A stretch of DNA of 64,000 nucleotides from Chrysemys picta bellii (lineage: Eukaryota), in contig NC_088802.1 in the NCBI RefSeq assembly GCF_011386835.1, positions 9,176,001-9,240,000 on the forward strand, read 5' to 3'. The position numbers and the translations under genes were made by a program. A model generated the notes under the pieces. That model was given only the letters and a program-made list of their open reading frames with translations, was not told the origin of the DNA and searched no databases. Shown one piece after another: positions 1,126 through 58,531 of the stretch. The first letter of the stretch is position 1. Every line of letters starts with the position of its first letter.

Positions 1126-3626
1126 GGTCTGGGTGGCCTATGATCTGATGCCGAGAGATCCAGCCCCTGCCTGTGACAGAGGAAAGTTTGGGCATGGCTC
1201 AGTGCCAATTGTCCCGTTTAGACTCAGTGCCCCGAGACATCACATCCCAGGGCTCCTCATTAGGCTTTGGGATGCGTCGCGCTGGGCCTTGTTAGCGTCT
1301 CCGCTCCTGCTTCCAGCTGGAGGATCCAGCCATTGGGGCTCTGGGGGTTATTAAAAACACATTATGTTTGTGGTGCAGTCTCTGACGAGGCCCCTGGCGG
1401 GGCCATTAAAAAGTTTCCTGTTCGAGATTCAGAAGGGAATCTAAAAGTGAGTCCAAAGGGAGCCGAACACGAGCGAGTCCCACGTGCAGCAGGAGAGCTT
1501 TTGTGTTAATTTGAGTGGAATACGGGGACCCAGAGACTCACAGGTGTTAGCATGACCCTGCCAGTTGTACAACTCTAAGCAGTCAACCATGGTTCGGGGT
1601 TTTGAGGACGGAGACCTCAATCCCCTGGGCACAGCACTGGAAAATTCATGCCATGGTTGGAAATGTATTGAGTCAGACACACCGGAGGGAAAATAATTTC
1701 AACTCAAGATATGCATCAGTTTGAATCTGCCATTGGCTGGTGAGGCGAAACTAACGTAACCCAAACTTTTCCAAGGGCCTTTTTCAGAGAGGATATTGAT
1801 TAGACGCTTTTATTTTGTCAAACAATCCCTGGTACGGTGGAAGAAAGGGTTGGAGATCAGTTGACGGCCGTGACTGGTGATTCCCTTTCCTGCCTTTAAC
1901 AAAGCAGAAGGATACAAGAGGAGAAGAGAGACCATAGCGGGGCAGTCCAGCTTTTCTTCATCTCAGGTGGCTGGTCAGTCTTACACAGATATGACTCCCA
2001 TGGGGTTGGGCACCTAAATGTCTTTGAGGATCTGACCCAAAGTGTCAAACATCTAAGGGTACAGCTGCGTCTCAGAGCTCAGGTCTATGCACTTGGGCTC
2101 GGACTAAAAATACCTGTGGAAACGTGCGGCCTCGGGTTCTGAGTCTTGCTGCTGTGGGTGTCTACTTGGCATGTAGACATACCCTGATAGCTGTCTAGAT
2201 CCTAATGCTGGGACTTGTCTATCCGCTCAGTCCCCTCCTATTCCACTGGGCTGATCGAGCTCTTTACTTAGCCTTCTGGCCTAGCTAGCTACATTGCAGC
2301 CAATACAGAGAGCGCTGTGAATGAAGTCTAGATGGGGACACATTTATTAACTTAGGAGCTCAGGGTTCGAGTTGGAGAGGCGAGGATGGCAGGGCAAAGT
2401 CAGTGGTGCCAGTTCAGCCCGGCGACATTAGAGCATAAAGGGAAGATTTATCACAGGCGACAATGGGCGGAGAGTCAGGAAATCCAGCGTCCCATTAGCC
2501 TGGTGACCCCGAGACCTGGACGCGGCTCCTCAAAGGCATTGAGGCTCTTAACTTCCATCGAAATCAATGGTTAGCGCCCCGCATGTCCTATGAGTCAGGT
2601 AGGGCTCATAATCTCCGTTTGCTGGCTGAGCTCAACCTGATGGCATTTCCCTGTCCCTGTCCTTTCTGAACACGGCTCCCGGTCGACTCCAAGACGTCAG
2701 GGGATGTTCTGGGCATCGCTGGGCAGAAGCCGATTTGTTTGGGGGAAATTCGGAAAACCAGAAGGGGAGAAACGGGGGATACGTGGAGTCCCTGCCGTGT
2801 GTTTAGCACAGTCACAGCTTCAAGCATCTCTTCAGTTGTCTAGAGAGCAAAGAATTGGTTGGTGACACCCACTAATGCTTCCCGGCCTGACCATGTGGAC
2901 CCCCTGAATGAATTGTCTCCGAGACAGAAAGAACAGAAATAATAATGGTGGAGGAAGTTGGGCACACAGAGCCATGGGGAGGGGGGAATGACAGGCAGTG
3001 CAGAACAGGGGTGTGCAGGGATACAGGGAGAATGGGGGAGCCTGAAATGTGGGGAGGAGGTAACGGGGGAGACACAGAGCCCCTGGCGTGAGTTGCAGGG
3101 AGTCCCTGAAACAGGGGGAGAGGAGAGGGGTACACACAGGGAGCTTGTGGGAGGGAACGGAGGGAGCCCCTGGTGGGAGCAAGGACCTCAGCCTGCACAA
3201 GCCGTGAAGTGTGTCAATGCCTAGGACAGAGGAGGAAACTGAGGTGCAGGGTGGTTAAGTGACTCGCCCAAGGTCAAACAGCAACTCTGTGGCAGGACCA
3301 GGTTTAGCGTCCAGGACGAATATGCTGCTCTAACTCATCAGACCCCACTCCCACCCCCCAGAGCTGGGATAGAACCTGGCTCCCAGCCCACTAGACTCCA
3401 CTCCCCTCCCCTCCCCATTGACTAGCTGCCCCTGCAGGGAGGATAAAAGGGTCTAGCAGCAGGCCAGCTCTTCCATAGGTCAATTGTTCCTGTGTGTTTA
3501 GTGCTGCGGGACAGGGGTTCTAGTCCTAGCTCCCCAGAAGTGGGTGTAGCTGGGATTCCAGTTCCTGACTGATCAGTGGGGATTCCCAGGGCGGCTTTGC
3601 CACTGCCATCCACCCCCTGGTTTGTG

Positions 3627-3900
3627 TAGGGCTACCATATGTCCAGATTTCCCCGGACAGGTCCGGCTTTTCGATCTATAAATAGCCATCCGGGGGGGAT
3701 TTCCTCCGGGTCGGCTATTTATAGATCAAAAAGCGGCGCTTCTCGGCTCCCCCCCCATCCCCTGCAGCCTTAGCACACCCCCGGCCCCGCAGCTGTCTTC
3801 CCCCATCTCCCCTCCCCTGAACGCTCCGTCCCCCTGCTCCTCCCGCTTCCCGCGAAGATCTGGATCAGGCATGGGAGTCCCAGGGGTCTGTCTGGGGGCA
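3627..3900. mobile_element. Partial hAT (Blackjack-like) MITE
   Basis: Starts TAGGGCTACCATATGTCC, a TIR like the next element's. Shares 'gggagtcccaggggtctgtctggggg' with 4923-4947. No right TIR found. Confidence 0.55.
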
Positions 3901-23189: not shown

Positions 23190-23390
23190 AAGGACAGAAA
23201 ACTTTTTAATGGCCCTCGTGGGCCCGCCACGGGGCTCATCAGAGGATGTGTCACAAATAGCAAGTGTCTCTGATGAGATGCAGTGTCCCCTGTCGCCACC
23301 CTACCCCCGACCCAGCCGGGAGCAGGAGCCGAGACGCTAACGACGCATTCTGGCACCTAACGAGGAGCGCTGGGATGCCGACGCTCCCCA
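23190..23390. promoter_or_regulatory. Candidate OR enhancer/promoter block upstream of OR 29784
   Basis: AACTTTTTAATGG at 23200-23212 plus TAACGA motifs; homologous to 35050-35250. Confidence 0.5.
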
Positions 23391-23963
23391 CCTTGGCCTT
23401 GTCTCCGCAGGGCAAACTCGGCACCGAGCCACTCCCGATCTCTCCTCTGTCTCAGGCAGGGGCTGGCTCTCTCTAAGCAGAAGCACCCCAGCGTCCTGGG
23501 AGGGGACAGAGTAGCGAGTCCAGTGTCACCCCAGTGGGGCTCACCGGAGGGAGAGAATGCCTGCCCTGGATTGAAACAAGGGGCGTTCAGGGCCAGCGTG
23601 CTGCCCTCCTGCCTGTGGCAAACAGATCGCCGGCCAGTCAGTCCAGTACGTCACACCCCTCTGCTCCAGATCAGTGACCAGCTGGTCCTCCGGCCCATAC
23701 CCTAAAACATCTAGTCCATGTCCCAGATCCCTCCATACTGGCTCAGACCCTGGGCCTATGTACTCCAGCATCCCACCTCCCCCCATTGTCCCCATAAATC
23801 CATAGCCTCACGGACCCTGTCCCCATAATAACGAACAGTCATTTTGCTTCCCCACTGCAGATGTTAGAGCACTTTACAAAGAAGGGGGAATGGCGTCTCC
23901 GAGGGGAGCGGCAGGGCCAGGCACAGAGCCCTGATCTCCAGCCGGACACCCTACCCACGAGAC

Positions 23964-24260
23964 CAGGGGTAGGCAACCTATGGCATGCGTGCCAAAGGCG
24001 GCACGCGAGCTGATTTTCAGTGGCACTCACACTGCCCGGGTCCTGGCCACCGGTCTGGGGAGCTCTGCATTTTAATTTAATTTTAAACATTTTAAAAACC
24101 TTATTTACTTTACATACAACAATAGTTTAGTTCTACATTATAGACTTATAGAAAGAGACCTTCTAAAAATTTTAAAATGTATTACTGGCACACAAAACCT
24201 TAAATTCGAGTGAATAAATGAAGACTCGGCACACCACTTCTGAAAGGTTGCCGACCCCTG
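23964..24260. mobile_element. hAT (Charlie-like) MITE
   Basis: CAGGGGTAGGCAACC...GGTTGCCGACCCCTG; same family as the split element at 31666-33588, in opposite orientation. Confidence 0.85.
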
Positions 24261-25959
24261 ACCTAGACCATGCTGCCTGGCCAGAGGGAGAGGCCTCCTG
24301 AACTCCATTCAGTGGCTCAGTGTTCACAGTTTCTGGGGACCCCGTACACATTCCTCTCCCGCTTTGTCGGGAGGGCTGGTGATTTTCCGACACTCGGAGG
24401 TGGTCCTCATAGTTCCCCTCGGTGGTTAGTGAAGGGAAAGCTGGGAGCGTGGGTACTGCAACAAAGAGATGCCCTGACTTGAAGGACCGATCGGGATCAA
24501 TAGTAGAGTAATGAACACATCCCATGAGTCCCGACACATAGGTCACCTCCTCCCTTGCTCTAACCCCCTGGACCCCTCTCCGCTCCCAGCAATAGGGATA
24601 GAACCCAGGAGTCTGGGCTACCAGCTCCTCCTCCTCTAACCCACTAGACCCAACTCCCCTCCCAGTGACAGGGAGAGAGCCCAGGAGTCCGGGCTCCCAG
24701 CTCTGACTGCCAGACTGCCCCACCGTGCTCTGCTTTCAGCGCATTCTGAGAACTGTCCTGGCTCGACTCACTCCCCCACTTAAAGGGACAATCTCTGCTC
24801 CAGGGTTCTGCGGGCCGCAGGGCCTGGACTGCATTCACACTCCCAGAGACAAGCCCTGGGGCCGAGCGGAGCCGTTGGCGCAGACGGGGCCATGTCCTAA
24901 AGGGAGGGGAGTGATCCTGGTGGCGGGGGGAGGGGGGGATAGTGGTCACTTCCCCAGCACCCGTCTCCCCATGTTGTCTCTCACGGCCCCTTTGGGGCAT
25001 GGGGTCCCTGGGGCTCTACAGACATCGCCAGTCGAGTCCCAGCCCTTTGGGGAGGCTGCAGGGAGGCCTCCCCCCTCCTGATTCCGATGCCCATAAAAGA
25101 CCTAAGTGTCTCCCCCCCTAACGGCCCTAGAGTCGGGGACGGGCTCCTTAGCTGTGCAGGGAGGAGCCTTGACAGGGCTGCGCCAAGGAGCTACGCCAGC
25201 CCAGGCAAATGGAGATATCATCCCCATGAGCCCAGAGCCACCACCATGGCGGGGTTAGGGCAGCGATCAGGGACAGAAGCTGTGGAGCCATCCCTCCTAC
25301 CAGCCTCTCGCCGTCTTATTCCCTCCAGCATTCTGCCACTTTCTCCTGCTCTGTCTCCCTCCGTTCGTCCGTCTCTCCCCCTCCACATCCTTCCACTCCA
25401 CCGTCTCTCTGCATCTCTCTCTGCTTTTCCTGCCGGCTACTTCTCTGCTTATCCACCCTTCTCTGTATCCTTCTATCCATTCTCTTCTCCCTCTCTTTCT
25501 CTATATCCATCTCTCTCTCTCTCTGTCTCTTCCTCTCTTTCCCTGCCCGTCCACATCTAGCATCCATCGCTCCAGCCACAATAAGTGTGTGTGTGTGTGT
25601 GCGTCTCCCTCTCCCCAGGTCTCTCCCCCAGCCCTCTCTGGGGTTTCTCTTGCTCCATCACTGTGATGTCTGGGTTCCTAGGAGCCCCTTCCAGCTGAGA
25701 CAGGCTCAGGGCAGATGTGCTGGGGGAGTCTTTCCTTCCTCCAGGTCCCTCGTTCACACACCAAGTGGCCCTGGCTTCTGGGATGGGGCGGGGGCAGCCC
25801 GTGATCCTGCGACCCCTGCTCTGAGCATCCAGTTTGCCCCATTCCCCTCCTCTTGAGACCCCCCAGGGCCTCAGCAGCATGTGGGGCAACCCCCTGCAGC
25901 CTCTGCACTTCCAGAGCTAGACGCGGACAGTGCTGCCCCATAGCAGGGGGACGGGGTTA

Positions 25960-26153
25960 GCTGGGCCCACTTAGACATTCAGTGCCAAAGCTTAGACCTG
26001 CCTCATATCCCAGGGCCTCACTGGAGTGGGGGCTCAGCGCAGAGGAGCAGGGACTCCAGACTCTGCCCTGGCATCAGAGCACCTGAGCTGCCCGGAGCTG
26101 CCCGGGCAGGAGGGATCTGGGGAGAACCGAGGTAGAGGTGAGTGAAGGTGAGT
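25960..26153 (+). other. Putative 5' exon of OR 29784, ending at a GTGAGT donor
   Basis: Homologous to 36820-36994 and 54830-55003; ends ..TGA GTG AAG|gtgagt (donor at 26148). 5' boundary unknown. Confidence 0.5.
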
Positions 26154-26534
26154 CCAGGGGGAAGGGGGTTTGAAATAGATGGAATACGGGAAGGGGACAG
26201 GAACCGCAGAATGAATGGAGAGAGAGAGAGACGTTATTGATCAGGGTTAATCTATAATGAGGGGGACGGGTTATGGATGGATTTGGGATAACATGGTGCT
26301 ATACAGATAGATTGATCAGATTTAGTGAAGATCCCCCCACAAATCTGGCTTGGTACAAGCAAGGGCTTGATGATGGTACAGAGACTGTGGCCCCAGTCCT
26401 GCATGTAGATCCACTGGTACCAGTGGCTATGGCTACACAGTGTCTTGCTGGAGGCCAGGGGATTTGCAGATCTCATTGGAAGGCCAGGACTGGTTTTAAT
26501 TTGTAACCCATCCTCGCTGCTTTTCTCCTAAAGT

Positions 26535-26717
26535 ATCAGGGGGTAGCCGTGTTAGTCTGTATCTACAAAAACAACAAGGAGTCTGGTGGCACCTTAAAGA
26601 CTAACAGATTTATTTGGGCATAAGCTTTCGCATCCGAAGAAGTGAGGTTTTTACCCACGAAAGCTTATGCCCAAATAAATCTGTTAGTCTTTAAGGTGCC
26701 ACCAGACTCCTTGTTGG
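26535..26717. mobile_element. Miniature Penelope hairpin insertion
   Basis: Inverted arms of about 60 bp (26571-26630 and 26657-26716); 14-bp direct repeat TTTTCTCCTAAAGT at 26521-26534 and 26718-26731. Confidence 0.88.
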
Positions 26718-27060
26718 TTTTCTCCTAAAGTTTCCTTGCTTTCCTGCTGACTTTCTCTGGGGCACATCCCCAGTGAGTGCAAACTGGAGCTATATTATGC
26801 TTGAACAGAGAAGTCCCCATCTTGATCAGGGCACTTTTTGTGGCAGGCGCTGCACAGACCCACAGCGAGAGACAGTCCTTGCCCCAGCTGAGATCAGGGC
26901 CCCGTTGTGCCGGGCGCTGCACAGACTCACAGTCTGTGCCCCTATGTAGGGAGGCAAGAAAATAAAGAGGGGAGAAATGAAGAATTATTATTCACATTTT
27001 AGAGAATGGGTACAGAGATGAAGTGACTTGTCCAGGGTCACCCAGGCAGCATGTGACAGG

Positions 27061-27183
27061 TAGGGGGACCAGATGTCCTGATTTTCTAGGGACATTCCTG
27101 GTATTTGGGGCTTTGTCTTATATAGGCACCTCTTACCTCCCACCCCCAGCCTGATTTTTCACACTTGCTAGCTGGTCACCCTA
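27061..27183. mobile_element. hAT (Blackjack-like) MITE
   Basis: Reverse-oriented relative of 14773-14896; flanks GTGACAGG and GTAACAGA (6/8). Confidence 0.8.
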
Positions 27184-27516
27184 GTAACAGATCTCCTGGG
27201 CCTTCGTCCACAAGGTCAAGTACATGGACTATCTCTCCCCATCCCCTTTCAACTTCTCACCTTTTGCTCTTTAGACTCTTCCCTTGTCATCATGCCACCA
27301 GTTCTCCCGTCCTCCCAAAGCCATCTCCATTGAGTTAGGGCCTGCAGGTAGATTGAGCAGAGAGCATTGGCTGGGTTCAGTCTTGTTCCCTTTCCTGGAA
27401 GAGCAGTCTCGCTTGAGGCTGTTTTCCCATCACTCCTCCAGTCCTTCCCAGCTCATCCTGACTTTTCAGAAACCAGGGAGCCAGTGCATTTATTAACTGA
27501 CTGCTATCAAATGTCC

Positions 27517-27731
27517 GCCTGGTTGTTGTAGCCGTGTTGGTCCCAGGATATGAGCGAGGCAAGGTGCGGGAGGTGATATCTTTGATTGAACCAACTTCTG
27601 TTGGAGGAAGGGACAAGCTTTCAAGCTTTTCTCCAGACCAGAGGAAGAGTTCTGTGTTGCTCAAAAGCCGGTCCCATCCACCAACAAGAATTGGTCCAAA
27701 ACAAGATATTACCTCATCTACTTTGTCTCTC
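27517..27731. mobile_element. Penelope-like short hairpin fragment of a second family
   Basis: ..aggtgatatctttgattgaaccaacttctgttgg.. and its inverse ..ttggtccaaaacaagatattacctc..; relatives at about 33600-33750 and 61300-61370. Confidence 0.6.
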
Positions 27732-28034
27732 TGCTGTCAAATATGCTGATGAGGTCTTTGTCCATTTCAGCTTTCCCCTACTTTATTTTTCTTGCTAAAA
27801 ACAGTTTTAAAAGAACAGAGCAGATGGTGGAGCCATCTGACCACCATCATGGACATCCTTCTGGCCCTGGTCTGTCTCTCTTCAGATTTCTCTTCTCCTC
27901 CTTTTCTCCCTTCCAAGGTTTATCTGGAGGGATGCCATTATTTATTTGGAGGTATAAAAGACTCAGGAGGTACCTATGCTACTGTCTGGAAGTCCAATAT
28001 GTTTGTAAAATTCTTAGCCCTTTTGGATAACACG

Positions 28035-28111
28035 GATAGAGTTGGAGGAGGGAATACTGGGCTAGATGGACCTTTGGTCTGACCCAGTCTGGCCATTCTT
28101 ATGTTCTTATG
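28035..28111 (+). mobile_element. CR1 3' tail
   Basis: actgggctagatggacctttggtctgacccagtctggccattcttatgttcttatgtt. Confidence 0.8.
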
Positions 28112-28280
28112 TTCCAAATCCACTCTCTGTGCAGGTGCCTCCCTCCTATATCCCCAGCTGGCCTGACCATGCAGGACTCCTGGTGGCCACGTTTGTGTAC
28201 AGATTTGGAATATACTGAATTATTCCCTGGTTTTAGTCACTATTTACTTCTTGTCAACACCTCCTGTGGATCCCAATGTT

Positions 28281-28522
28281 AAGAACATAAGAACAGCCAT
28301 ACTGGGTCAGACCAAAGGTCCATCTAGCCCAGTATCCTGTCTTCCGACAGTGACCATTGCCAGATGCTCCAGAGGGAATGAACAGAACAGGTAATCATTA
28401 AGTGATCCATCCCCTGTCGCCCATTCCCAGCTTCTGGCAAACAGAGCTAAGGTCACCATCCTGCCCATCCTGGCTAATAGCCATTGATGGACCTATACGC
28501 CAGCAACTTACCGAGTTCTTTT
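28281..28522 (-). mobile_element. CR1 3' end
   Basis: taagaacataagaacagccatactgggtcagaccaaaggtccatctagcc.. Confidence 0.85.
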
Positions 28523-28664
28523 TTGTGATGCTCATAAATCCACCATTCCAGCCCCTCCAAATCCTTTCTCAATGTGTATCTAGGCACTTCTGAATCTTCA
28601 CTTCCCCTGGCTGCCCAGGATTCATGAGGACCAAACCAAAATACCTCCTGAAGAACCCATCTGT

Positions 28665-28959
28665 GGGCTGGTCTACACTGAGTGGGGGGATCGATCCAAG
28701 ATGCGCAACTTCAGCTACGCGAATAGCGTAGCTGAAGTCGAAGTATCTTGGATCGAATTACCTGGGGTCCAGACGGCGCGGAATCGACGGCCGCGGCTCC
28801 CCCGTCGACTGCGCTACCGCCGCTCGCTCTGGTGGAGTTCCGGAGTCGACGGTGAGCGCGTTCGGGGATCGATATATCGCGTCTTAATGAGACGCGATAT
28901 ATCGATCCCGGATAAATCGATTGCTACCCGCCGATATGGCGGGTAGTGAAGACGTACCC
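28665..28959. mobile_element. Harbinger-type MITE (295 bp)
   Basis: GGGCTGGTCTACACT...AGTGAAGACGTACCC; 3-bp TSD TGT; TCGA/ATCGAT-rich interior. Confidence 0.85.
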
Positions 28960-29447
28960 TGTGGCACCAATTGTTTGAAAAACCACCATCCCAGTCCCTT
29001 CTGAATGCACTTTCCTTTTGTATAGCTGGCCCCCTGAACAATCATCTGTCTCCACCAGCCAGAACTCCTGGCTATCAAACTGTAGATATACAGCATAGCT
29101 AGCCACTCTCTGTTTTGAGCGGATGAACCATTGCTTCTCTAAAATACTTGCTCTGGATACCACCACTGCCTCCAGTGCGACCTGGGAGCCCACTGCTGTT
29201 ACCACTACTCACAAACCCGTCATTCCAGCCTCTCGCCAATCTACTCTCTCCACTAGCCCCAGGATTCATGGTTCCCAAATGAAATTCCCTACTGTTAAAA
29301 CAGATGGTTCCTAATCCACCATCCTCATCTCGCCCCAATCCATTCTCTTAGTATTTGCCGAATCCCCAAATCCTCATTTCCCCCTGACCAGCCTGGAGTC
29401 ATAGAGACAAGTCTCTCTTACAGCTTTGGAACATGCCTAAGTTACGA

Positions 29448-29553
29448 GGCCAGGTCTACACTGCAAACTTTTGCTGGTATAGTAATGTCAGTTACGGGGA
29501 GTGATTTTTAGCGACATTTCTATACTGGCAAAAGCCCTAGTGTAAACACAGTC
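29448..29553. mobile_element. Short Harbinger-type MITE
   Basis: GGCCAGGTCTACACT...AGTGTAAACACAGTC ends. Confidence 0.55.
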
Positions 29554-29783
29554 AGAGCAGCATAAAAGTGTATCACCCTGCTGGCACCAATGCTAACATA
29601 GATCTCACTACTGCTACCAATACTCACAAACCTACCATCCCAGCCCTTCCCATATCTACTCAATCAGTGTAAATAGCTGTCTACCCCTTCCAGGATTCAC
29701 GGTCACCATCCCAAAACACCCACTTCTGTTCCCACTCCTATGATCAATTATTACAAATCTCCTTAATGCAGGTTATTTTCCAG

Positions 29784-30740
29784 ATGGGTTACAGCGAAGT
29801 GGCCTGGGAAGAGGGAAACCAAAGCTCCTTGGGGGAATTCATCCTGCTAGGGGTGTCTGACCGGCCGCAATTGGAGCTGCTGCTTTTTGTGCTCATCTTA
29901 ATCTTCTATGTCATGACACTGCTGGGAAACACCACCATCATCGTGGTCTCATGGCTGGACCCCTGTCTCCACACGCCCATGTATTTCTTCCTCAGCAACC
30001 TCTCTTTCCTGGACCTTTGCTTCACTACCAGTCTTGGCCCCCAGATGCTGGTGAACTTCTGCAGCGCCCGCAAGTCCATCCCTTGGGCCGGCTGCATGGC
30101 CCAGCTCTACATCTCCCTCTCGCTGGGCTCCACCGAGTGCCTCCTGCTGGCCATCATGGCCTACGACCGCTACGTCGCCGTCTGCCAGCCGCTGCGCTAC
30201 ACGGCCATCATGAGCCGCCGCCTCTGCCTGCAGATGATGGTTACCGCCTGGCTGAGCGGCTTCGGCAACGGACTGGTGAAGATAGTGCTGATTCTGCGGC
30301 TGCCCTGGTGTGGGAGGAATCAGATCAACCACTTCTTCTGCGAGGTGCCGGCCCTGCTCAAGCTGGCCTGCACCGACACCTCCACCAACATGGCCGAGCT
30401 CCTCGCCAGCGCTGTGTTTTTATTGCTGCTGCCGCTGGGCCTCATCCTGGTTTCCTACGGCTACATCGGCACCGCCGTGCTGAGGATGCGTTCAGCCGAG
30501 GGCAGGCGCAAGGCCTTCAACACCTGCACCTCCCACCTGGCCGTGGTGTCGCTTTTGTACGGCACGGCCATCTACATGTACCTGCTGCCCTCGTCCCAGG
30601 ACCAGGGCAAGTTCGTCTCACTCTTCTACACCATGGTGACCCCCATGCTCAACCCCTTGATCTACACACTGAGGAACAAGGAGGTGCACGGGGCCCTGCG
30701 GAGAGTGCTGGGGAGGAACCCGACCTCTCAGGGGACCTGA
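29784..30740 (+). CDS. Olfactory receptor, class II, family-2-like, 318 aa, intact
   Basis: NQS glycosylation site; [13 protein letters not shown]; [15 protein letters not shown]; HFFCE; [10 protein letters not shown]; [18 protein letters not shown] directly follows an acceptor (ttattttccAG|ATG); another in-frame ATG at 29766. Confidence 0.95.
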
Positions 30741-35250: not shown

Positions 35251-36982
35251 CCCAGCCCCTGGGCTCTAGCTCCTCAGGGGGCGGTTGGCACAAGGCAGCT
35301 CACAGATCTTCCTCTGTTGCAGGAGGTGCTGGGTCTCTCTGCACGGAGCTGCCATGGAACTGATTGAGGTGACACAGTGGAGAGTCCAGGCTCACCAGCT
35401 AAGGGCGGGGACAGAAAGGAGAGAGGCTTGATTGAAATCACAGAAATGACCCATCAGGGTAATTGTCCTGCCCTCTGCCTATGCCAGACAGATCACTGGC
35501 CAGCGAGTCCAGTTACCCCATGTCTCCCTGCCCCAGATCATTGGCCAGCTAGTAAGGGCTTGGGCTGGGGTCACAACGCCAGTGATGGGTCTGAAGGCTG
35601 GGAAATGAGACCTGGGGTTTAGGGGAGCCCTCGGGACAGATGGGGCTGTGACTAGAGCGGGGGTTGTGGCCCCAATCCTGGTGCATTGCTCAGGGGCTGG
35701 GGTCACTCCTCCCCAGGCCACTCTCCCCTAGATGGCGTTGCTGGAGGAGTCTCCTGGCCAATTGGGTGCACGGGGTCCCTGGGGCATCGCAAACCACACC
35801 AGCCAAGTCCCAGCCCCCAGGAGGCTTCAGGGAGTCACATCTCCCGCCCCCTTCCTGGTTCCAACGTCCATAAGAGCCCTGCCTGCACCCTCCCCTTCAC
35901 CCACGGCCCCATGCACGCAGGGACAGATATCATGAGCTGCACAAGCAGGAGCCTCCCACAATCACAGAGACACAGGGCCCTTCTCAGCTGTGCTTCGGAG
36001 CTGGGGCAGCTCAGGCGTTATGTGACACCAGGGCTGGGATAAGTCAAGGAGCAGGGACACAGCCTGGGGATCCTACCTCCTTCCAGCCATCCACTGTACT
36101 TCTCCAGATCTATCCAGCTCTCTGGGTCTCTCCCCAACTCGCTATCCTTCTGCTCGTCCGTCTCTCTTTCTCTCCGTCTCTATCCTTCTATCCATCTACC
36201 TCTCCACCCTCCAGCCTTCTATCCATCCACCTCTCTGCAGATCTCCCTGCTCTTCTATCTGTCTCTTTATTGCTCCTTTTATCCATCCTTCTCTCTGCCT
36301 TTCTTTCTGTCCTAACAATTCACCTCTCTCATCCCCCTGACTCCCATCTATCCTCTCCTCTCTCAGACTGCCCCTCTCTTTTCACATCTGTGCACGTCTG
36401 GCATCCATCAGTCCATCCACACTCTCTCTCCATTCCTCTCCCTCTATCCATCTCTCTCCTCCCCATCTCTGGAATTTCTTTCATTGCATCACTGTGTTCT
36501 CTGGGCTTCTAGGAGACCCTGTCAGCTGAGAGAGGCTCAGGGTATCCCTCCTAGCCTGAGGCAACCTGCCCGCAGGAACTTCACTCACACAGTGACCAGG
36601 CTTGTTTCCTGGGAGGCAGAGGGGGTACCCTGTGACCATGCAACACTGGCTCTGAGCATCCAGTTTGCCACATTCCCTTCCTTTTGAGACCCACCCCAGA
36701 GCCCCAGCAGTGGGTGGGGGGGGGCAAAACCTGCAGCCTCTGGGCTTCCAGAGCTAGATGCGGACGGTGCTGATCCACGGCAGGGGGCGAACTTAGCTGG
36801 TCTCCCTGACCCCGGAGCATCCTTAGACATTCAGCTCCACAGCTCGGGGCTGCCTCGTCCCAGGCACTGGGGGCTCAGTGCAGGGGAGCAGAGACTCCAG
36901 ACTCTGCCCTCGCATCGGAGCATCTGAGCCGCCCGGAGCTGCCCGGACAGGAGGAACCTGGGGAGAGCAGAGCCGGAGGTGA

Positions 36983-36988
36983 ATGGAG
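36983..36988 (+). CDS. Predicted first coding mini-exon segment (ATG GAG) of OR 38949
   Basis: TGA ATG GAG|GTGAGT; a phase-0 join to 38949 gives MEEERGNGSSQWEF. Confidence 0.65.
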
Positions 36989-37387
36989 GTGAGTCTGGGC
37001 TTTTTTCCATCGCTCGTTCCTGCTTATTACTGGGGAGGGGCCAGGAGCTGGGGAGCATGTGGGCTGGTTAGATTTCTTAGCTCTGTGCGATGGGTCTGAT
37101 AAGACTTCCCTGCCTGTCAGGGGTGATGTGAGGAGAAACCCACTAGAGATTGTTAGGTGCTGAGATACTGTTTATATTGTAGTCCCTGTCAGTCGCAGAG
37201 AGAAGTACATAAACATAATAGATTCATGTTAAAGTGGCAGTAGAATCCTAGACATGTAGGGCTTGAGGGTACCTCCAGAGGTCATCTGCGCCATACCCCC
37301 ACACTGAGGCAGGAATAAGTTTACCTAGACCATACTTGACCAGTGTTTGTCCAACCTGTTCTTAAAACCCTCCCTGGACGGCATGGC

Positions 37388-38390: not shown

Positions 38391-38948
38391 TCCGACCTAA
38401 TGGACATGGAGAACAATTGATCACCATCCTCTTCACAACAAATTTTCACATATTTGAAGACTGTTACTAGGTCCCCCTTGAACCTTCTTTCCTCTAGACT
38501 AAACATGCCCAGTTTTTTCACTCATAAGAGGGGCAATTTGGGATCATAGTTAGAAGCCCCAGTCGCGACCAGGATCTGTACAAATACAGAATAAAAGCAA
38601 TGAAACAAAACAGCCTCCATCCCAAAGACCTTATAATCTAAGCATCCATTTATCTATCACATCCTATTGCTCCCACCAACTGCCACAGATCCAGTTTTCT
38701 AGGACACTTTAATTTCCTGTTATATGGATCCTCCTTTGTCACTAACTGCCACAGAACCACTTTTCTGCGACAAAGCCATTCCTGGCAGAAGGATCCTACC
38801 TGCCACCCAACTGTCCCAGATTTTCGATGACAAAGTCACAAGCGGGCGTGGTTCATTCTGAGCAAATGGGGCTGCCCCTGAATGTGTCTGCCTGGTGTAT
38901 GGCTGTTGGGGCTCCTTTCATCCTTATCTTTGTCCCTTCTCCCTGCAG

Positions 38949-39893
38949 GAGGAAAGAGGGAACGGGAGCTCTCAGTGGGAATTCATCCTATTGGGGGTCT
39001 CTGACCAACCACGCCTGGAGATGCTGCTTTTCGTGGTGTTCCTGGTCTTGTACGTCCTGAACCTGGTGGGGAACCTGGCCATCATTGTGGTCTTGTGGCT
39101 GGAACCCTGTCTCCACACCCCTATGTATTTCTTCCTCAGCAACCTCTCTTTCCTGGACCTTTGCTACACCACCAGCACCGTTCCTCAGATGCTGGTGAAC
39201 TTCCGCAGCACCCACAAGTCCATCACCTGGGCTGGCTGCGTGGCCCAGCTCTACATCTTCCTCTCGCTGGGCTGCACCGAGTGCCTCCTGCTGGCCGTCA
39301 TGGCCTACGACCGCTACGTCGCCATCTGCCAGCCACTGCACTACACAATTGTCATGAGCCGCCGCCTCTGTCTGCAAATGGCGGTCACCGTCTGGTTGAG
39401 TGGCTTCAGCAACTCCATGCTGCAGACCGTCCTGACCGTGCGGCTGCCCCGGTGTGGGCGGAACCGGGTCAACCACTTCTTCTGCGAGGTGCCGACCCTG
39501 CTCAAACTGGCCTGTGTTGACACCTCCACTATCGAGGCTGAGCTTTTTGCTGTCAGTGCGATCTTCCTGCTGGTGCCGCTGGGCCTCATCCTGGTCTCCT
39601 ATGGCTACATTGTCGCCGCCGTGCTGAGGATTCGCTCAGCCCAGGGCAGGCTCAAGGCCTTCAACACCTGCGCCTCCCACCTGGCCGTGGTGTCGCTCTT
39701 CTATGGCACGGCCATTTTCATGTATCTACAGCCTCCATCCAGCTACTCCCAGGACCGGGGCAAGATGGTCTCCCTCTTCTATGGCATCATCGCCCCCATG
39801 CTGAACTCACTGATCTACACGCTGAGGAACAAGGATGTGCACGGGGCCCTAAGGAGGGTGCTGGGGAGGCTATTCGGGAGTAAGAGGACATGA
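38949..39893 (+). CDS. Olfactory receptor, class II, family-2-like; main coding exon (316 aa when spliced), intact
   Basis: All OR motifs present (LHTPMY, MAYDRY, HFFCE, KAFNTCASHL, PMLNSLIY). Begins right after the acceptor ..tttgtcccttctccctgcAG. The ORF-track start at 38895 is GTG, not ATG. Confidence 0.93.
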   Translation, partial: EERGNGSSQWEFILLGVSDQPRLEMLLFVVFLVLYVLNLVGNLAIIVVLWLEPCLHTPMYFFLSNLSFLDLCYTTSTVPQMLVNFRSTHKSITWAGCVAQLYIFLSLGCTECLLLAVMAYDRYVAICQPLHYTIVMSRRLCLQMAVTVWLSGFSNSMLQTVLTVRLPRCGRNRVNHFFCEVPTLLKLACVDTSTIEAELFAVSAIFLLVPLGLILVSYGYIVAAVLRIRSAQGRLKAFNTCASHLAVVSLFYGTAIFMYLQPPSSYSQDRGKMVSLFYGIIAPMLNSLIYTLRNKDVHGALRRVLGRLFGSKRT

Positions 39894-43113: not shown

Positions 43114-43558
43114 AGCGCCTCAAGTCCATCGCTTGGGCCGGCTGCGTGGCCCAGCTCTACATCTCCCTCTCGCTGGGCTCCACCGAGTGCCTCCTGCTGG
43201 CTGTCATGTCCTACGACCGCTACGCCGCCATCTGCCAGCCACTGCGCTACACGGCCATCATGAGCCGCCGCCTCTGTCTGCAGATGATGGTTACCGCCTG
43301 GCTGAGCGGCTCTGGCAACGCACTGGTGAAGACGGTGCTGACTCTGCGGCTGCCCCGGTGTGGGAGGAATCGAATCAACCACTTCTTCTGCGAGGTGCCG
43401 GCCCTGCTCAAGCTGGCCTGCGCCGACACCTCCACCAACATGGCCGAGCTCCTCGCCAGCGGTGTGTTTTTACTGCTGCTGCCATTGGGCCTCATCCTGG
43501 TCTCCTACAGCTACATCGGTGCCGCTGTGCTGAGGATGCGTTCGGTCGAGGGCAGGCT
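43114..43558 (+). pseudogene. Olfactory receptor fragment (TM3-TM5), paralog of OR 29784
   Basis: [25 protein letters not shown]...ILVSYSYIGAAVLRMRSVEGR; TM1-2 and TM6-7 missing, repeat-derived sequence on both sides. Confidence 0.92.
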
Positions 43559-54100: not shown

Positions 54101-54991
54101 TGGGGATCCTACCTCCTTCCAGCCATCCACTGTACTTCTCCAGATCTATCCAGCTCTCTGGGTCTCTCCCCAACTCACTGTCCTTCTGCTCATCTCTTTC
54201 TCTCCTTCTCTATCCTTCTATCCATCTACCTCTCCACCCTCCAGCCTTCTATCCATCCATCTCTCTGCAGATCTCTCTGCTCTTCTATCCATCTCTTTAT
54301 TACTCCTTTTATCCATCCTTCTCTGTCTTTCTTTCTGTCCTAACAATTCACCTCTGTCTCCCTCTCTCTCTCATCCATCCACTCCTCTCTCGGACTCTCC
54401 CTCTCTTTTCGCATCTGTGCACATCTGGCATCCATCAGTCCATCCACACTCTCTCTCCATTCCTCTCCCTCTATCCATCTCTCTGTCTCCTCCCCATCTC
54501 TGGGATTTCTTTCGATCTATCACTGTGGTCTCTGGGCTTCTAGGAGACCCTGCCAGCTGAGAGACACTCCCTCCCAGCCTGGGACAACCTGCCTCCAGGA
54601 ACTTCACTCACACACCAAGCGGGCTTGGTTCCTGGGATGGGGGTGTTACCCTGTGATCATGCAACACTGGCTCTGAGCGTCCAGTTTGCCACATTCTCTT
54701 CCTTTTGAGACCCACCCCAGGGCCCCAGCAGTGTGTGTGTGGGGTGCAACACTTGCAGCCTCTGGGCTTCCAGAGCCAGCTGTGGATGGCAGGGGGCAAA
54801 CTTAGCTGGTCTCCCTGACCCCAGAGCATCCTTAGACATTCAGCTCCACAGCTCGGGGCTGCCTCGTCCCAGGGACTGGGGGCTCAGTGCAGGGGAGCAG
54901 GGACTCCAGACTCTGCCCTGGCATCGGAGCATCTGAGCCGCCCGGAGCTGCTCGGGCAGGAGGAACCTGGGGAGAGCAGAGCCGGAGGTGA

Positions 54992-54997
54992 ATGGAG
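54992..54997 (+). CDS. Predicted first coding mini-exon segment (ATG GAG) of OR 57587
   Basis: TGA ATG GAG|GTGAGT, identical to 36980-36994; phase-0 join to 57587. Confidence 0.65.
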
Positions 54998-57586
54998 GTG
55001 AGTCTGGGCTTTTTCCACCACTCGTTCCTGCTTATTACTGGGGAGGGTCCAGGAGCTGGGGAGCATGTGGGCTGGTTAGATTTCTTAGCTCTGTCCGATG
55101 GGTCTGATAAAACTTCCCTGCCTCCCAGGGGTGATGTGAGGAGAAACCCACTAGAGATTGTTAGGTGCTGAGATACTGTGCTGCTGGGGGGCAGACAAGT
55201 GCCATCGATTGGTAGATTTGGTTAGGGTTGGAATCTGTCTTATCCAGGGTCCCCTAGCCCACAAACATGCAGGGAGAACTTTGCACAGGTGAGTAGTTAA
55301 TCACCTGGGCGAGGGTCTGCAGGATGGTGTTTGTAAAGTGCCGTGTAAACCTGTTGTCCCATGAGGGGCCCTGATCCTGCAAAGATCTACGCACGTGCTT
55401 AACATAAGCCCACGGGCAACCCCACTGTAAGTGGTTTGGGTAAAGGAGATTAGGGCCGGTAGGAAGCATGGGCCACATTTACAAAGGGATTTAGGTGCCC
55501 GCAAGTACAGATGGGTGCTAGGTGCCTAACTCCTATTGGGACCAAAGGAGTTAGAAAATCTTTTGCAAAATCCCACTTGTTGCCTATCTGCATATTTAGC
55601 CCTATATGAGTCCATAATCCCCCTGAATAGCAGTGGGTTTGGGTGCATCATTCCTTAAAGTTGCTTTGGAAGCCCCCGCTCTTACTGCTCGTAGGATCAG
55701 GGTCTACCTTATCATTAGTGGTACTGAGATTATTTTATTCTCGCCCTGAGTGTTTAGATCATGGTCCCTGTCAGTCGCAGAGAGAAGTACATAAACATAG
55801 GAAATTCACGTTAAAGTGGCAGTAGAATCCTAGACAAGTAGGGCTTGAGGGTACCTCCAGAGGTCATCTGCGCCATACCCCCACACTGAGGCAGGAATAA
55901 GATTACCTAGACCATACTTGACCAGTATTTGTCCAACCTCTTCTTAAAACCCTCCCTGGACGGCATGGCATTTCGGGCTGCAATCCAGACTAATGAGGGG
56001 TTGGGTCACCCCTGCCCTGCTACCTTGGCTGCCTCACAATCTTTTGTTGTTGTAGCTTCCAACCTGGGTCGCTCACAAGCAGCCTGCCAGGATGCAGGTC
56101 ACACCCTGAGTGTCTGTGTATAGCCACAGCCCTGGTCCAGCAACTCTGACCCCAGCCGCCTATCTGCAAACACCAGCCACACTGTGGCTTCCTGCAGCCT
56201 TGGTTACCACTTGTAGGGTGACTACAAGAAATTCCCAGGTCCAAATTCCCGCCGAAGACTTGGGTTCTGCACTGCCCGGCCCCTTCCTGGACAGCTCAGA
56301 TATTGTAGGTCCGTTGCCTCTCTAAGGAGATCGATATCCAACAGTTTGCTACTTTAAATGGAGTTACCCCCACGATTCAGTTTAACTGCAGTTTGGATTA
56401 TGGAATAAAACATGTTTAACTATGAAGAGACAGGTTTCAAGTGAGTAAAAGTATAAGACATTCAAGTCAGAAATGGTTACAGGAGAAGTAAAGGGAAAAC
56501 ACTTCCTAGTACTAAAATTAACAAACTAGATTTGGCTCAAGGTGAATTCCCTTTCACATTTTCCCAGTAACATTGCTGAGCCAATTCTCAGAACAAGATC
56601 TGCTCCCAAAGTCCAAACGCTGTTTCTTTTGTCTTCTTAGGGGAAAGAGAGCGAGAGATGGATAGGGAGAGTTCTCTTGGGGTTTTTCTCCCCCTCACTT
56701 TTATAGTCCAGTCACCCTTTGATATGCATTTTCTTGAGGGTTCTGCCTAGCTAAAGTTCATTCCTGCTGCAAGGGCGGAGACAAGGAGTCTAATGGTGAA
56801 GGAGATGCCATGCTGTTGTTTGCTTCAATGCAGATCGGGTTGTTCCTGCCCCACTTCCTTGCCAAAGACTGGCCACTTGATAAGTGATTGCCCATCGCCT
56901 TTGATGATACTTGGCCAGACTCCTTTGTGTTTAAGAAACTGATTTACCCAGACTTGTGTTGTAAACTTATTTCCGACCTAATGGACATGTAGAACAGTTG
57001 ATCACCATCCTCTTTACAAACTCTTTACACCAATTGATCACCATCCTCTTTACGACAAATTTTCACATAGTTGAAGACGGTTACCAGGTTCCCCTTCAGC
57101 CTTCTCTCCTCTAGACTAAACATGCCCAGTTCTTTCACCCATAAGAGGGGCAGAGGACAGTTAGCGCTGCAAATTTGGGATCATAGTTAGGAGCCCCAGT
57201 TGCGACCAGGATCTGTACAAATACAGAATAAAATCAATGAAACAAAACAGCCTCTGTCCCAAAGACCTTATAATCTAAGCATCCATTTATCTATCACATC
57301 CTATTGCTCCCACCAACTGCCACAGATCCAGTTTTCTAGGACACTTTAATTCCCTGATGTATGGATCCTCCTTTGTCACTAAGTGCCACAGAACCACTTT
57401 TCTGTGACAAAGCATTTCCCTGGCAGAAGGATCCTACCTGCCACCCAACTGGGTCAGATTTTCGATGACAAAGTCACAAGCGGGCGTGGTTCATTCAGAG
57501 CAAATGGGGCTGCCCTTGAATGTGTCTCCCTGGTGTATGGCTGTTGGGGCTCCTTTCATCCTTATCTTTGTCCCTTCTCGCTGCAG

Positions 57587-58531
57587 GAGGAAAGAGGGAA
57601 CGGGAGCTCTCAGTGGGAGTTCATCCTATTGGGGGTCTCTGACCAACCACGCCTGGAGATGCTGCTTTTCGTGGTGTTCCTGGTCTTGTACGTCCTGAAC
57701 CTGGTGGGGAACCTGGCCATCATTGTGGTATTGTGGCTGGAACCCTGTCTCCACACCCCTATGTATTTCTTCCTCAGCAACCTCTCTTTCCTGGACCTTT
57801 GCTACACCACCAGCATCGTTCCTCAGATGCTGGTGAACTTCCGCAGCACCCACAAGTCCATCACCTGGGCCGGCTGCGTGGCCCAGCTCTACGTCTTCCT
57901 CTCGCTGGGCTGCACCGAGTGCCTCCTCCTGGTCGTCATGGCCTACGACCGCTATGTCGCCATCTGCCAGCCGCTGCGCTACACAATCGTCATGAGCCGC
58001 CGCCTCTGCCTGCAGATGGCGGCCACTGTCTGGTTGAGCGGCTTCAGCAACTCCATGCTGCAGACCATCCTGACCGTGCGGCTGCCCCGGTGTGGGCGGA
58101 ACCGGGTCAACCACTTCTTCTGTGAGGTACCGGCCCTGCTCAAACTGGCCTGTGTTGACACTTCCGCTAACGAGGCCGAGGCTTTTGCTGTCAGTGTGAT
58201 CTTCCTGCTGGTGCCGCTGGGCCTCATCCTAGTCTCCTACAGCTACATCGTCGCCGCCGTGCTTAGGATTCGCTCGGCCCAGGGCAGGCTCAAGGCCTTC
58301 AACACCTGCGCCTCCCACCTGGCCGTGGTGTCGCTCTTCTACGGCACGGGCATTTTCATGTATCTACAACCTCCGTCCAGCTTTTCCCAGGACCGGGGCA
58401 AGATGGTCTCCCTCTTCTATGGCATCATCGCCCCCATGCTGAACTCACTGATCTACACGTTAAGGAACAAGGATGTGCACGGGGCCCTAAGGAAGGTGCT
58501 GGGGAGGCTATTCGGGAGTAAAAGGACATGA
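57587..58531 (+). CDS. Olfactory receptor, class II, family-2-like; main coding exon, paralog of 38949, intact
   Basis: Same motifs and length (945 nt); acceptor ..tttgtcccttctcgctgcAG. The ORF-track start at 57383 is GTG, with no in-frame ATG before TM1. Confidence 0.93.
   Translation, partial: EERGNGSSQWEFILLGVSDQPRLEMLLFVVFLVLYVLNLVGNLAIIVVLWLEPCLHTPMYFFLSNLSFLDLCYTTSIVPQMLVNFRSTHKSITWAGCVAQLYVFLSLGCTECLLLVVMAYDRYVAICQPLRYTIVMSRRLCLQMAATVWLSGFSNSMLQTILTVRLPRCGRNRVNHFFCEVPALLKLACVDTSANEAEAFAVSVIFLLVPLGLILVSYSYIVAAVLRIRSAQGRLKAFNTCASHLAVVSLFYGTGIFMYLQPPSSFSQDRGKMVSLFYGIIAPMLNSLIYTLRNKDVHGALRKVLGRLFGSKRT

What the first reader, a model, noticed from the sequence alone, without database searches (positions are those of the whole stretch)
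26138..29786. A single A/G difference marks a switch in where the OR start codon lives
Seen: the homologous upstream exon ends TGA GTG AAG|gtgagt for OR 29784 but TGA ATG GAG|gtgagt for ORs 38949 and 57587. Reciprocally, OR 29784 has its ATG as the first bases after its acceptor, while the other two have none. The GTG version also creates a second GTGAGT donor 10 nt upstream. Inference: start-codon turnover between a non-coding and a coding first exon, caught among paralogs, i.e. a route to gaining or losing a coding intron.
Basis: partly seen in the sequence, partly recalled or inferred. Interest (0 to 1): 0.7.

Follow-up and report, generated by a model that had tools for sequence, protein, structure and literature searches.

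The report
Turtle smell-receptor start codon changes exon
Three neighbouring painted-turtle smell-receptor genes share a small upstream leader exon: in two it supplies the start codon, while in the third that start codon has mutated away and an older one just behind the intron is used, a clear but unsurprising example of how these genes gain or lose an intron inside their coding region.

Summary
The three upstream segments are homologous for about 300 nt. They end TGA GTG AAG|GTGAGT (26139-26153) and TGA ATG GAG|GTGAGT (36980-36994, 54989-55003). OR 29784 has ATG directly after a CAG acceptor; ORs 38949 and 57587 have no usable ATG in the main exon.

Thirteen related gene copies from six turtles and two alligators, read at DNA level, set the direction of change. 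ATG GAG|GTGAGTC is the old state of this leader exon: it is intact in nine copies from every clade except the OR 29784 orthologues. An ATG at codon 1 or 2 of the main exon is also old (turtles, alligator, gecko). Four copies still carry both, in frame.

- **38949/57587 lineage:** lost the first 7 codons of the main exon before the turtle-alligator split, so it depends on the upstream ATG.
- **OR 29784 lineage:** lost the upstream ATG by three different lesions: GTG in Chrysemys, AGG in Emys, a 10-nt deletion in Emydura.

The A/G difference is therefore a recent loss of a redundant start codon, not the event that separated the paralogues. No RNA evidence could be obtained.

Split receptor genes, including 2-codon stubs and two-isoform genes, are already described in mammals. 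This scan had already noted the split start on this window and on the adjacent stretch of the same genome.

The parts
25850..26147 (+). Promoter and leader-exon module of OR 29784. It ends GTG AAG with no ATG; the transcription start is not mapped.
   Evidence: About 300 nt homologous to the modules at 36690-36988 and 54700-54997. The same module sits upstream of related genes in other turtles and alligators. There is no ATG in the last 150 nt.
26142..26147 (+). GTG AAG, the position of the ancestral ATG GAG. The A-to-G change is at 26142 and a G-to-A change at 26145.
   Evidence: The Emys orthologue reads AGG AAG here and the Emydura orthologue lacks these 10 nt.
26148..26153 (+). Consensus splice donor AAG|GTGAGT of the leader exon.
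   Evidence: GTGAGTC is kept at the homologous place in 12 of 13 modules; Pelodiscus has GCGAGT.
26138..26143 (+). Second consensus donor GAG|GTGAGT, 10 nt upstream, created by the A-to-G change. Using it would shorten the non-coding leader only.
26148..29783 (+). Intron of OR 29784, 3636 nt. It is now a 5'-UTR intron and was formerly a phase-0 coding intron. An alternative acceptor lies at 29771/29772.
   Evidence: Inferred from splice signals and homology; no RNA data.
29784..30740 (+). OR 29784 coding exon: 318 codons plus stop, with ATG as the first codon after ttttccag.
   Evidence: It is 99% identical to the NCBI protein P0003 of Chrysemys picta bellii, which carries PF13853/PF00001. The acceptor-adjacent ATG is shared with Emys, Emydura, Eretmochelys c2 and the gecko.
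36690..36988 (+). Leader module of OR 38949, ending ATG GAG (36983-36988) before the donor at 36989.
38949..39893 (+). OR 38949 main exon. It starts GAG GAA AGA GGG AAC GGG AGC and has no ATG before TM1.
54700..54997 (+). Leader module of OR 57587, ending ATG GAG (54992-54997) before the donor at 54998.
57587..58531 (+). OR 57587 main exon, with the same layout as OR 38949.

Best explanation
Each receptor gene of this OR2-like family carries its own copy of a roughly 300-nt promoter and leader-exon module, 2 to 9 kb upstream. [quoted passage not shown] It joined in phase 0 to a main exon that had its own ATG at codon 1 or 2. Two in-frame start codons therefore straddled the leader intron, differing by only 2-3 residues of extracellular N-terminus. 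Either one could be lost without harm, and lineages resolved differently. The 38949/57587 lineage lost the first 7 codons of the main exon, including that ATG, before turtles and crocodilians split, and has depended on the upstream ATG since (an obligate split gene). The OR 29784 orthologue group kept the ATG next to the acceptor and lost the upstream one. In Chrysemys the loss was ATG to GTG, so its first exon is now non-coding and its intron is a 5'-UTR intron. Shown here: the sequences, their homology, the frames, and the distribution of states on the tree. Inferred: that the modules are transcribed and spliced as proposed, and which ATG ribosomes use in genes that carry both.
For: - **Observation and homology:**
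- **Protein trees:** searches place OR 29784 with the Emys, Gopherus, Pelusios and Emydura orthologues (clade c1). They place 38949/57587 with alligator members (clade b). There is also a turtle sister clade (c2) and an alligator clade (a).
- **Upstream ATG intact:** ATG GAG|GTGAGTC is intact in Chrysemys b (two genes), Emys b, alligator b, two alligator a genes, and Emys, Gopherus and Eretmochelys c2.
- **Upstream ATG lost in c1:** the three lesions differ: GTG AAG in Chrysemys, AGG AAG in Emys, a 10-nt deletion in Emydura. It is also lost in Pelodiscus c2.
- **Main-exon starts:** ATG at codon 1 in c1, Eretmochelys c2 and the gecko. GTG ATG in Emys, Gopherus, Pelodiscus and Macrochelys c2 and in A. 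sinensis a. GTG TTG in A. mississippiensis a. All b genes are 7 codons shorter.
- **Age of the main-exon ATG:** annotated squamate N-termini such as MKYSDASWE have the same length as MGYSEVAWE.
- **Conservation of the module:** a profile built from turtle modules only finds one hit per gene in the alligator loci, each ending at AATGGAG|GTGAGTC (E from 9e-19 to 2e-7). Blastn of the Chrysemys OR 29784 stretch (window 22000-29960) against the one alligator locus tried (L007) aligned only the coding exon and two short pieces, nothing in the intron.
- **Leader signature:** the 150 nt before the donor hold no ATG other than the terminal one in 12 of 13 modules, against 2-3 per 150 nt in the introns.
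- **Existing models:** annotations in Eretmochelys (ME+MILGKG) and alligator (ME+VLHSK) already use this split.
Against: - There is no transcript evidence.
- Within turtles the leader module is no better conserved than the intron: 95-98% everywhere between Chrysemys and Emys, and 69% against 76-82% between Chrysemys and Emydura. Constraint therefore shows only at turtle-alligator distance.
- The upstream ATG has a weak context (T at -3 in turtles), and one alligator copy has an out-of-frame ATG 5 nt before it.
- No leader homologue was found in the gecko, so the state before the turtle-alligator ancestor is unknown.
- Loci were fetched through annotated intact proteins, so genes lacking both ATGs would not have been sampled.
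- The inference that the emydid ancestor still had ATG is favoured by one parsimony step only.
Confidence: 0.7

Rival explanations
1. The upstream modules are promoters or other regulatory DNA that is not spliced to the receptor exon as proposed. ORs 38949/57587 would then start elsewhere, for example at the ATG at 38866 with an 83-nt mini-intron, as the current NCBI model (MGLGNGSS...) implies. On that reading no start codon has changed exon.
For: There is no RNA evidence. The NCBI protein P0046 begins MGL and not ME. Within turtles the module is no better conserved than the intron.
Against: The MGL model needs a CT|GCCCCT donor and an acceptor inside the conserved exon, and that ATG is absent from the alligator b locus. 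By contrast, AATGGAG|GTGAGTC is identical in 9 gene copies across turtles and alligators, is in frame every time, and is the first ATG of an ATG-free leader. Independent annotations in Eretmochelys and alligator use it.
Confidence: 0.1
2. The direction is the reverse. A non-coding first exon like that of OR 29784 is ancestral, and the ATG GAG was gained in the other lineages, so this is gain of a coding intron.
For: The gecko and other squamates have the start codon in the main exon next to the acceptor, like OR 29784. At some deeper node the upstream ATG must have been gained.
Against: This reading would need the identical ATG GAG to arise independently in clades a, b and c2, or OR 29784's clade to branch outside all of them, which the trees contradict. 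The three c1 orthologues carry three different lesions at the site, which is the signature of decay rather than of an ancestral state.
Confidence: 0.1
3. The G at 26142 is an assembly error or a rare allele, and OR 29784 in most painted turtles still has the upstream ATG.
For: It is a single base in one assembly, and it sits in the most substitution-dense 19 nt of the locus.
Against: The neighbouring changes (CCG to GTA, GAG to AAG) are several and would not all be errors. The Emys and Emydura orthologues also lack the ATG, so the ATG-less state is tolerated.
Confidence: 0.05

Closest known systems
Mammalian split olfactory receptor genes (Barnes et al. 2020, PMC7055050): 13 human and 41 mouse genes
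   Same: The initiator ATG and a few codons lie in the exon upstream of the main receptor exon, across a 0.5-22 kb intron in the extracellular N-terminus. The supplementary list shows introns after residue 1, 2 or 3, for example Olfr94/OR2I1P after residue 2. ORs 38949/57587 have exactly this layout, a 2-codon stub with introns of 1960 and 2589 nt.
   Different: These are reptile genes, and here the layout is backed by conservation only, not by RNA-seq or single-cell expression. Orthology to any mammalian split gene was not tested.
Mammalian receptor genes with both a split and a single-exon isoform (Barnes et al. 2020, second class, e.g. Olfr1331 and Olfr1333), and in-frame upstream ATGs (13.6% of human and 21.5% of mouse receptor genes)
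   Same: The relatives with both ATGs in frame (Emys, Gopherus and Eretmochelys c2, A. sinensis a) match this class at sequence level. This is the redundant intermediate that allows turnover.
   Different: In mammals the two isoforms come from alternative splicing or alternative exons seen in RNA. Here one transcript would carry both ATGs 2-3 codons apart, and which is used is unknown.
Conventional vertebrate olfactory receptor gene: non-coding leader exon(s) plus an intronless coding exon
   Same: OR 29784 as it stands: a full 318-codon ORF in one exon, a CAG acceptor directly before the ATG, and an ATG-free leader with a consensus donor 3.6 kb upstream.
   Different: Its leader exon is a decayed copy of a formerly coding first exon, so its 5'-UTR intron is homologous to the coding intron of its neighbours.

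Membership tests
Split olfactory receptor genes (Barnes et al. 2020) | The main exon lacks the conserved initiator ATG or N-terminus. | tested here: met
   Met for ORs 38949 and 57587: there is no in-frame ATG between the acceptor and TM1. Not met for OR 29784, which has ATG at 29784 and so is not filed here.
Split olfactory receptor genes (Barnes et al. 2020) | An in-frame ATG in the adjoining upstream exon, joined through a canonical GT-AG intron. | tested here: met
   ATG GAG|GTGAGT joined to ctgcag|GAG GAA is in phase 0 for both b genes. For OR 29784 the codon is GTG, so the feature is not met there.
Split olfactory receptor genes (Barnes et al. 2020) | The initiator Met and the splice junction are conserved in orthologues. 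| tested here: met
   Emys b (L001) and alligator b (L008) have the same ATG GAG|GTGAGTC and the same cag|GAR GAA AGA GGN AAY start of exon 2.
Split olfactory receptor genes (Barnes et al. 2020) | Transcripts showing the splice. | not testable with these tools
   No run is on record as RNA.
Conventional receptor gene with a non-coding leader exon (applies to OR 29784) | A complete receptor ORF with its own ATG in one exon. | tested here: met
   29784-30740 holds 318 codons and is 99% identical to the annotated Chrysemys protein P0003, which carries PF13853 and PF00001.
Conventional receptor gene with a non-coding leader exon (applies to OR 29784) | An upstream exon without ATG, spliced to an acceptor just before the start codon. 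| tested here: inconclusive
   Consensus donors lie at 26148 and 26138, CAG acceptors at 29783/4 and 29771/2, and the leader is ATG-free. There is no RNA evidence.
Receptor genes with two N-terminal isoforms or an in-frame upstream ATG (Barnes et al. 2020) | Both an upstream-exon ATG and a main-exon ATG, in frame. | tested here: not met
   None of the three window genes has both. Four relatives do: Emys, Gopherus and Eretmochelys c2, and A. sinensis a.

The most novel reading that the evidence does not exclude
This reptile receptor family has kept two redundant in-frame start codons on either side of its leader intron for more than about 250 million years. Lineages have repeatedly and independently lost one or the other. 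The upstream ATG was lost at least four times, three of them by different lesions within one orthologue group. The downstream ATG was lost at least twice. The family would then be a natural series showing that coding introns in receptor genes arise and vanish by start-codon drift across a pre-existing 5'-UTR intron, not by intron insertion. The excess of substitutions in the last 19 nt of the Chrysemys leader would hint that removal of the upstream ATG was not merely neutral.
Probability: 0.5. Interest if true: 0.45.

Novelty: new member of a known kind. Interest (0 to 1): 0.33.

Why it matters
- **Annotation and gene counts:** pipelines that mine receptor genes as single-exon ORFs, as large vertebrate surveys do, will call the 38949/57587 type truncated or give it invented starts. 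The current NCBI model begins MGL via a non-canonical mini-intron. This affects gene counts in turtles, which have among the largest repertoires.
[quoted passage not shown] The intron was already there and only the start codon moved.
- **Size of the effect:** the functional consequence for the protein is two or three N-terminal residues, so the interest is in gene-structure evolution rather than physiology.

Tried and rejected
- **RNA evidence:** Alignments of the window stopped at 29960. The full coding exon was used only inside local tree-building scripts and through database protein ids.
- **Spliced models:** Exons were handled separately, by reference.
- **Acceptor alignment:** the MAFFT alignment A2 paired aatgcag|G of OR 29784 with ctgcag|G of the others and implied a 33-nt gap. 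Comparison with c2, Emydura and alligator shows the true homologue is the acceptor next to the ATG, and the length difference is 7 codons.
- **Exon against intron conservation within turtles** was uninformative because introns align too.
- **Leader exon in the gecko:** not found by profile or motif, so the tree could not be rooted for this character.
- **More c1 orthologues:** the Gopherus evgoodei c1 orthologue P0009 is not on record. The Macrochelys c2 leader was not found within 10 kb.
- **Gene-conversion donor** for the substitution cluster at 26125-26150: none in the window.
- **ATG at 29766**, in frame upstream of 29784, was rejected as the start. In Emydura the homologous ATG runs into TAA, and in Chrysemys it lies in the acceptor region.
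Full report
**What is in the sequence**

- The segment upstream of OR 29784 ends TGA GTG AAG followed by GTGAGT (26139-26153). The donor G is at 26148, and a second GTGAGT lies at 26138-26143.
- The segments upstream of ORs 38949 and 57587 end TGA ATG GAG followed by GTGAGT (36980-36994 and 54989-55003).
- The degenerate 15-mer occurs three times, against 0.04 expected.
- About 300 nt before each donor are homologous: 72-75% identity between the 29784 copy and the other two, 90% between those two.
- OR 29784 has ttttccag|ATG at 29783/29784, opening a 318-codon receptor ORF.
- ORs 38949 and 57587 have ctgcag|GAG GAA AGA GGG AAC GGG AGC. They have no in-frame ATG before TM1, and ATG GAG joins them in phase 0.
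- The window holds these three intact receptors and one fragment.
- The genome is Chrysemys picta bellii.

**Relatives and tree**

It returned annotated reptile relatives, and their N-termini already show several start types. A tree of 86 proteins, trimmed from the FILLG motif, gave the following groups:
- a squamate clade;
- an archelosaur clade made of an alligator group (a);
- a group (b) holding 38949/57587 with alligator members;
- a turtle group made of c1 (OR 29784 with its Emys, Gopherus and Pelusios orthologues) and c2.

A second tree of the genes read at DNA level puts the Emydura gene in c1, with support 98/95.

**DNA of twelve loci from other species**

State of the leader end:
- ATG GAG|GTGAGTC is intact in Chrysemys b (two genes), Emys b, alligator b, A. 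mississippiensis a, A. sinensis a, and Emys, Gopherus and Eretmochelys c2.
- In c1 it is destroyed three different ways. Chrysemys has GTG AAG, Emys has AGG AAG, and Emydura lacks the 10 nt.
- Pelodiscus c2 has lost it too.

Start of the main exon, all behind a positionally conserved YAG acceptor:
- ATG at codon 1 in c1, Eretmochelys c2 and the gecko;
- GTG ATG in Emys, Gopherus, Pelodiscus and Macrochelys c2 and in A. sinensis a;
- GTG TTG in A. mississippiensis a;
- 7 codons fewer in all b genes.

Four genes therefore carry both ATGs in frame, five only the upstream one, four only the downstream one, and none lacks both. Sampling went through annotated intact proteins, so genes lacking both would have been missed.

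**Direction of change**

The upstream ATG occurs in clades a, b and c2, so it predates the turtle-alligator split. An ATG at the start of the main exon is at least as old. Squamate N-termini such as MKYSDASWE match MGYSEVAWE in length, and the gecko has the acceptor directly before its ATG.

The b lineage lost the downstream ATG before that split, because alligator b shares the short exon 2. OR 29784's GTG is derived. The two emydids share GAG-to-AAG but hit different bases of the ATG. An ATG-bearing emydid ancestor is therefore the most parsimonious reading, by one step.

The A/G difference is thus a late loss of a redundant start codon in one species lineage. It is not the mutation that set the paralogues apart.

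**Is the module really a leader exon?**

There are no transcripts to show it. Indirect support is as follows:
- A profile built only from turtle modules finds exactly one hit per gene in the alligator loci. Each ends at AATGGAG|GTGAGTC, with E from 9e-19 to 2e-7.
- Blastn of the Chrysemys OR 29784 stretch against the one alligator locus tried (L007) aligned only the coding exon and two short pieces, nothing in the intron.
- The 150 nt before the donor contain no ATG except the terminal one in 12 of 13 modules, against 2-3 per 150 nt in the introns.
- The donor stays consensus even where the ATG is gone.
- Existing models in Eretmochelys and alligator use this split.

Against this, within turtles the module is not better conserved than the intron.

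**Known biology**

Barnes et al. 2020 (PMC7055050) described 13 human and 41 mouse split receptor genes.
- They counted 23 independent events in mouse.
- They found a class with both split and single-exon isoforms.
- Introns fall after residue 1-3 in many, for example Olfr94/OR2I1P after residue 2.
- No paper on reptile split receptors was found.
- A large vertebrate survey mined receptor genes as single-exon genes.

Earlier notes of this scan (s1-312469, s1-314122) had already reached the split-start reading for the b genes here and on the adjacent stretch of the same genome. What this finding adds is the comparison with OR 29784, the direction of change, and the both-ATG intermediates.

**Limits and rules followed**

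- After, no letters of 29970-30008 were sent to any search tool.

Noticed in passing
window 26124-26151: Chrysemys and Emys differ at 2.45% over 5424 aligned nt of this locus. The only 19-nt windows with 4 or more mismatches are the last 19 nt of the OR 29784 leader exon, with 5 mismatches: CCG to GTA and A to G on the Chrysemys side, T to G on the Emys side. This is about ten times the background rate, so it is not simple relaxation. No conversion donor was found in the window.
   Followed up: partly
window 29760-29784; L004 9830-9872: Emydid OR 29784 orthologues lack 24 nt that Emydura has between tttttcag and gacag|ATG. This brings an upstream CAG next to the ATG and leaves two CAG acceptors 12 nt apart (29771/2 and 29783/4).
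   Followed up: partly
window 38866-38956 and 57470-57594: The current NCBI protein for these genes (P0046, MGLGNGSS...) appears to use ATG GGG CT at 38866. It then needs a non-canonical CT|GC donor and an acceptor 8 nt inside the conserved exon, an 83-nt mini-intron. This is probably a model artefact.
   Followed up: partly
L008 10001 versus 3399-3698: The NCBI alligator model P0114 (MEGSNGSS) starts at a G-rich repeat, ATGGAGGGGA|GTGAGA, and splices 10 nt inside exon 2. The conserved leader module, ending AATGGAG|GTGAGTC, lies 8.8 kb upstream and would give MEEERGNGSS, like the turtles.
   Followed up: partly
window 43122-43556: A receptor fragment 88% identical to residues 97-241 of OR 29784. 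It has neither N- nor C-terminus and is probably a pseudogene remnant.
   Followed up: no
L011 1900-2864: A b-type receptor in Gopherus flavomarginatus has ...ctcctttgaatGAGGAAAGA where the others have ...ctccctgcag|GAGGAAAGA. The acceptor AG is gone, so the gene may be dead or may use another acceptor.
   Followed up: no
L012 10001-11150: The Macrochelys c2 reading frame stops after 224 codons, and the annotated model bridges the break with an intron. No leader module lies within 10 kb upstream.
   Followed up: no
L010 19703-19740: The next A. sinensis receptor model begins with a different 10-codon first coding exon, ATG GAC AAC AGC ... CTG|GTAAGT. This may be another kind of split receptor or a chimeric model.
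   Followed up: no
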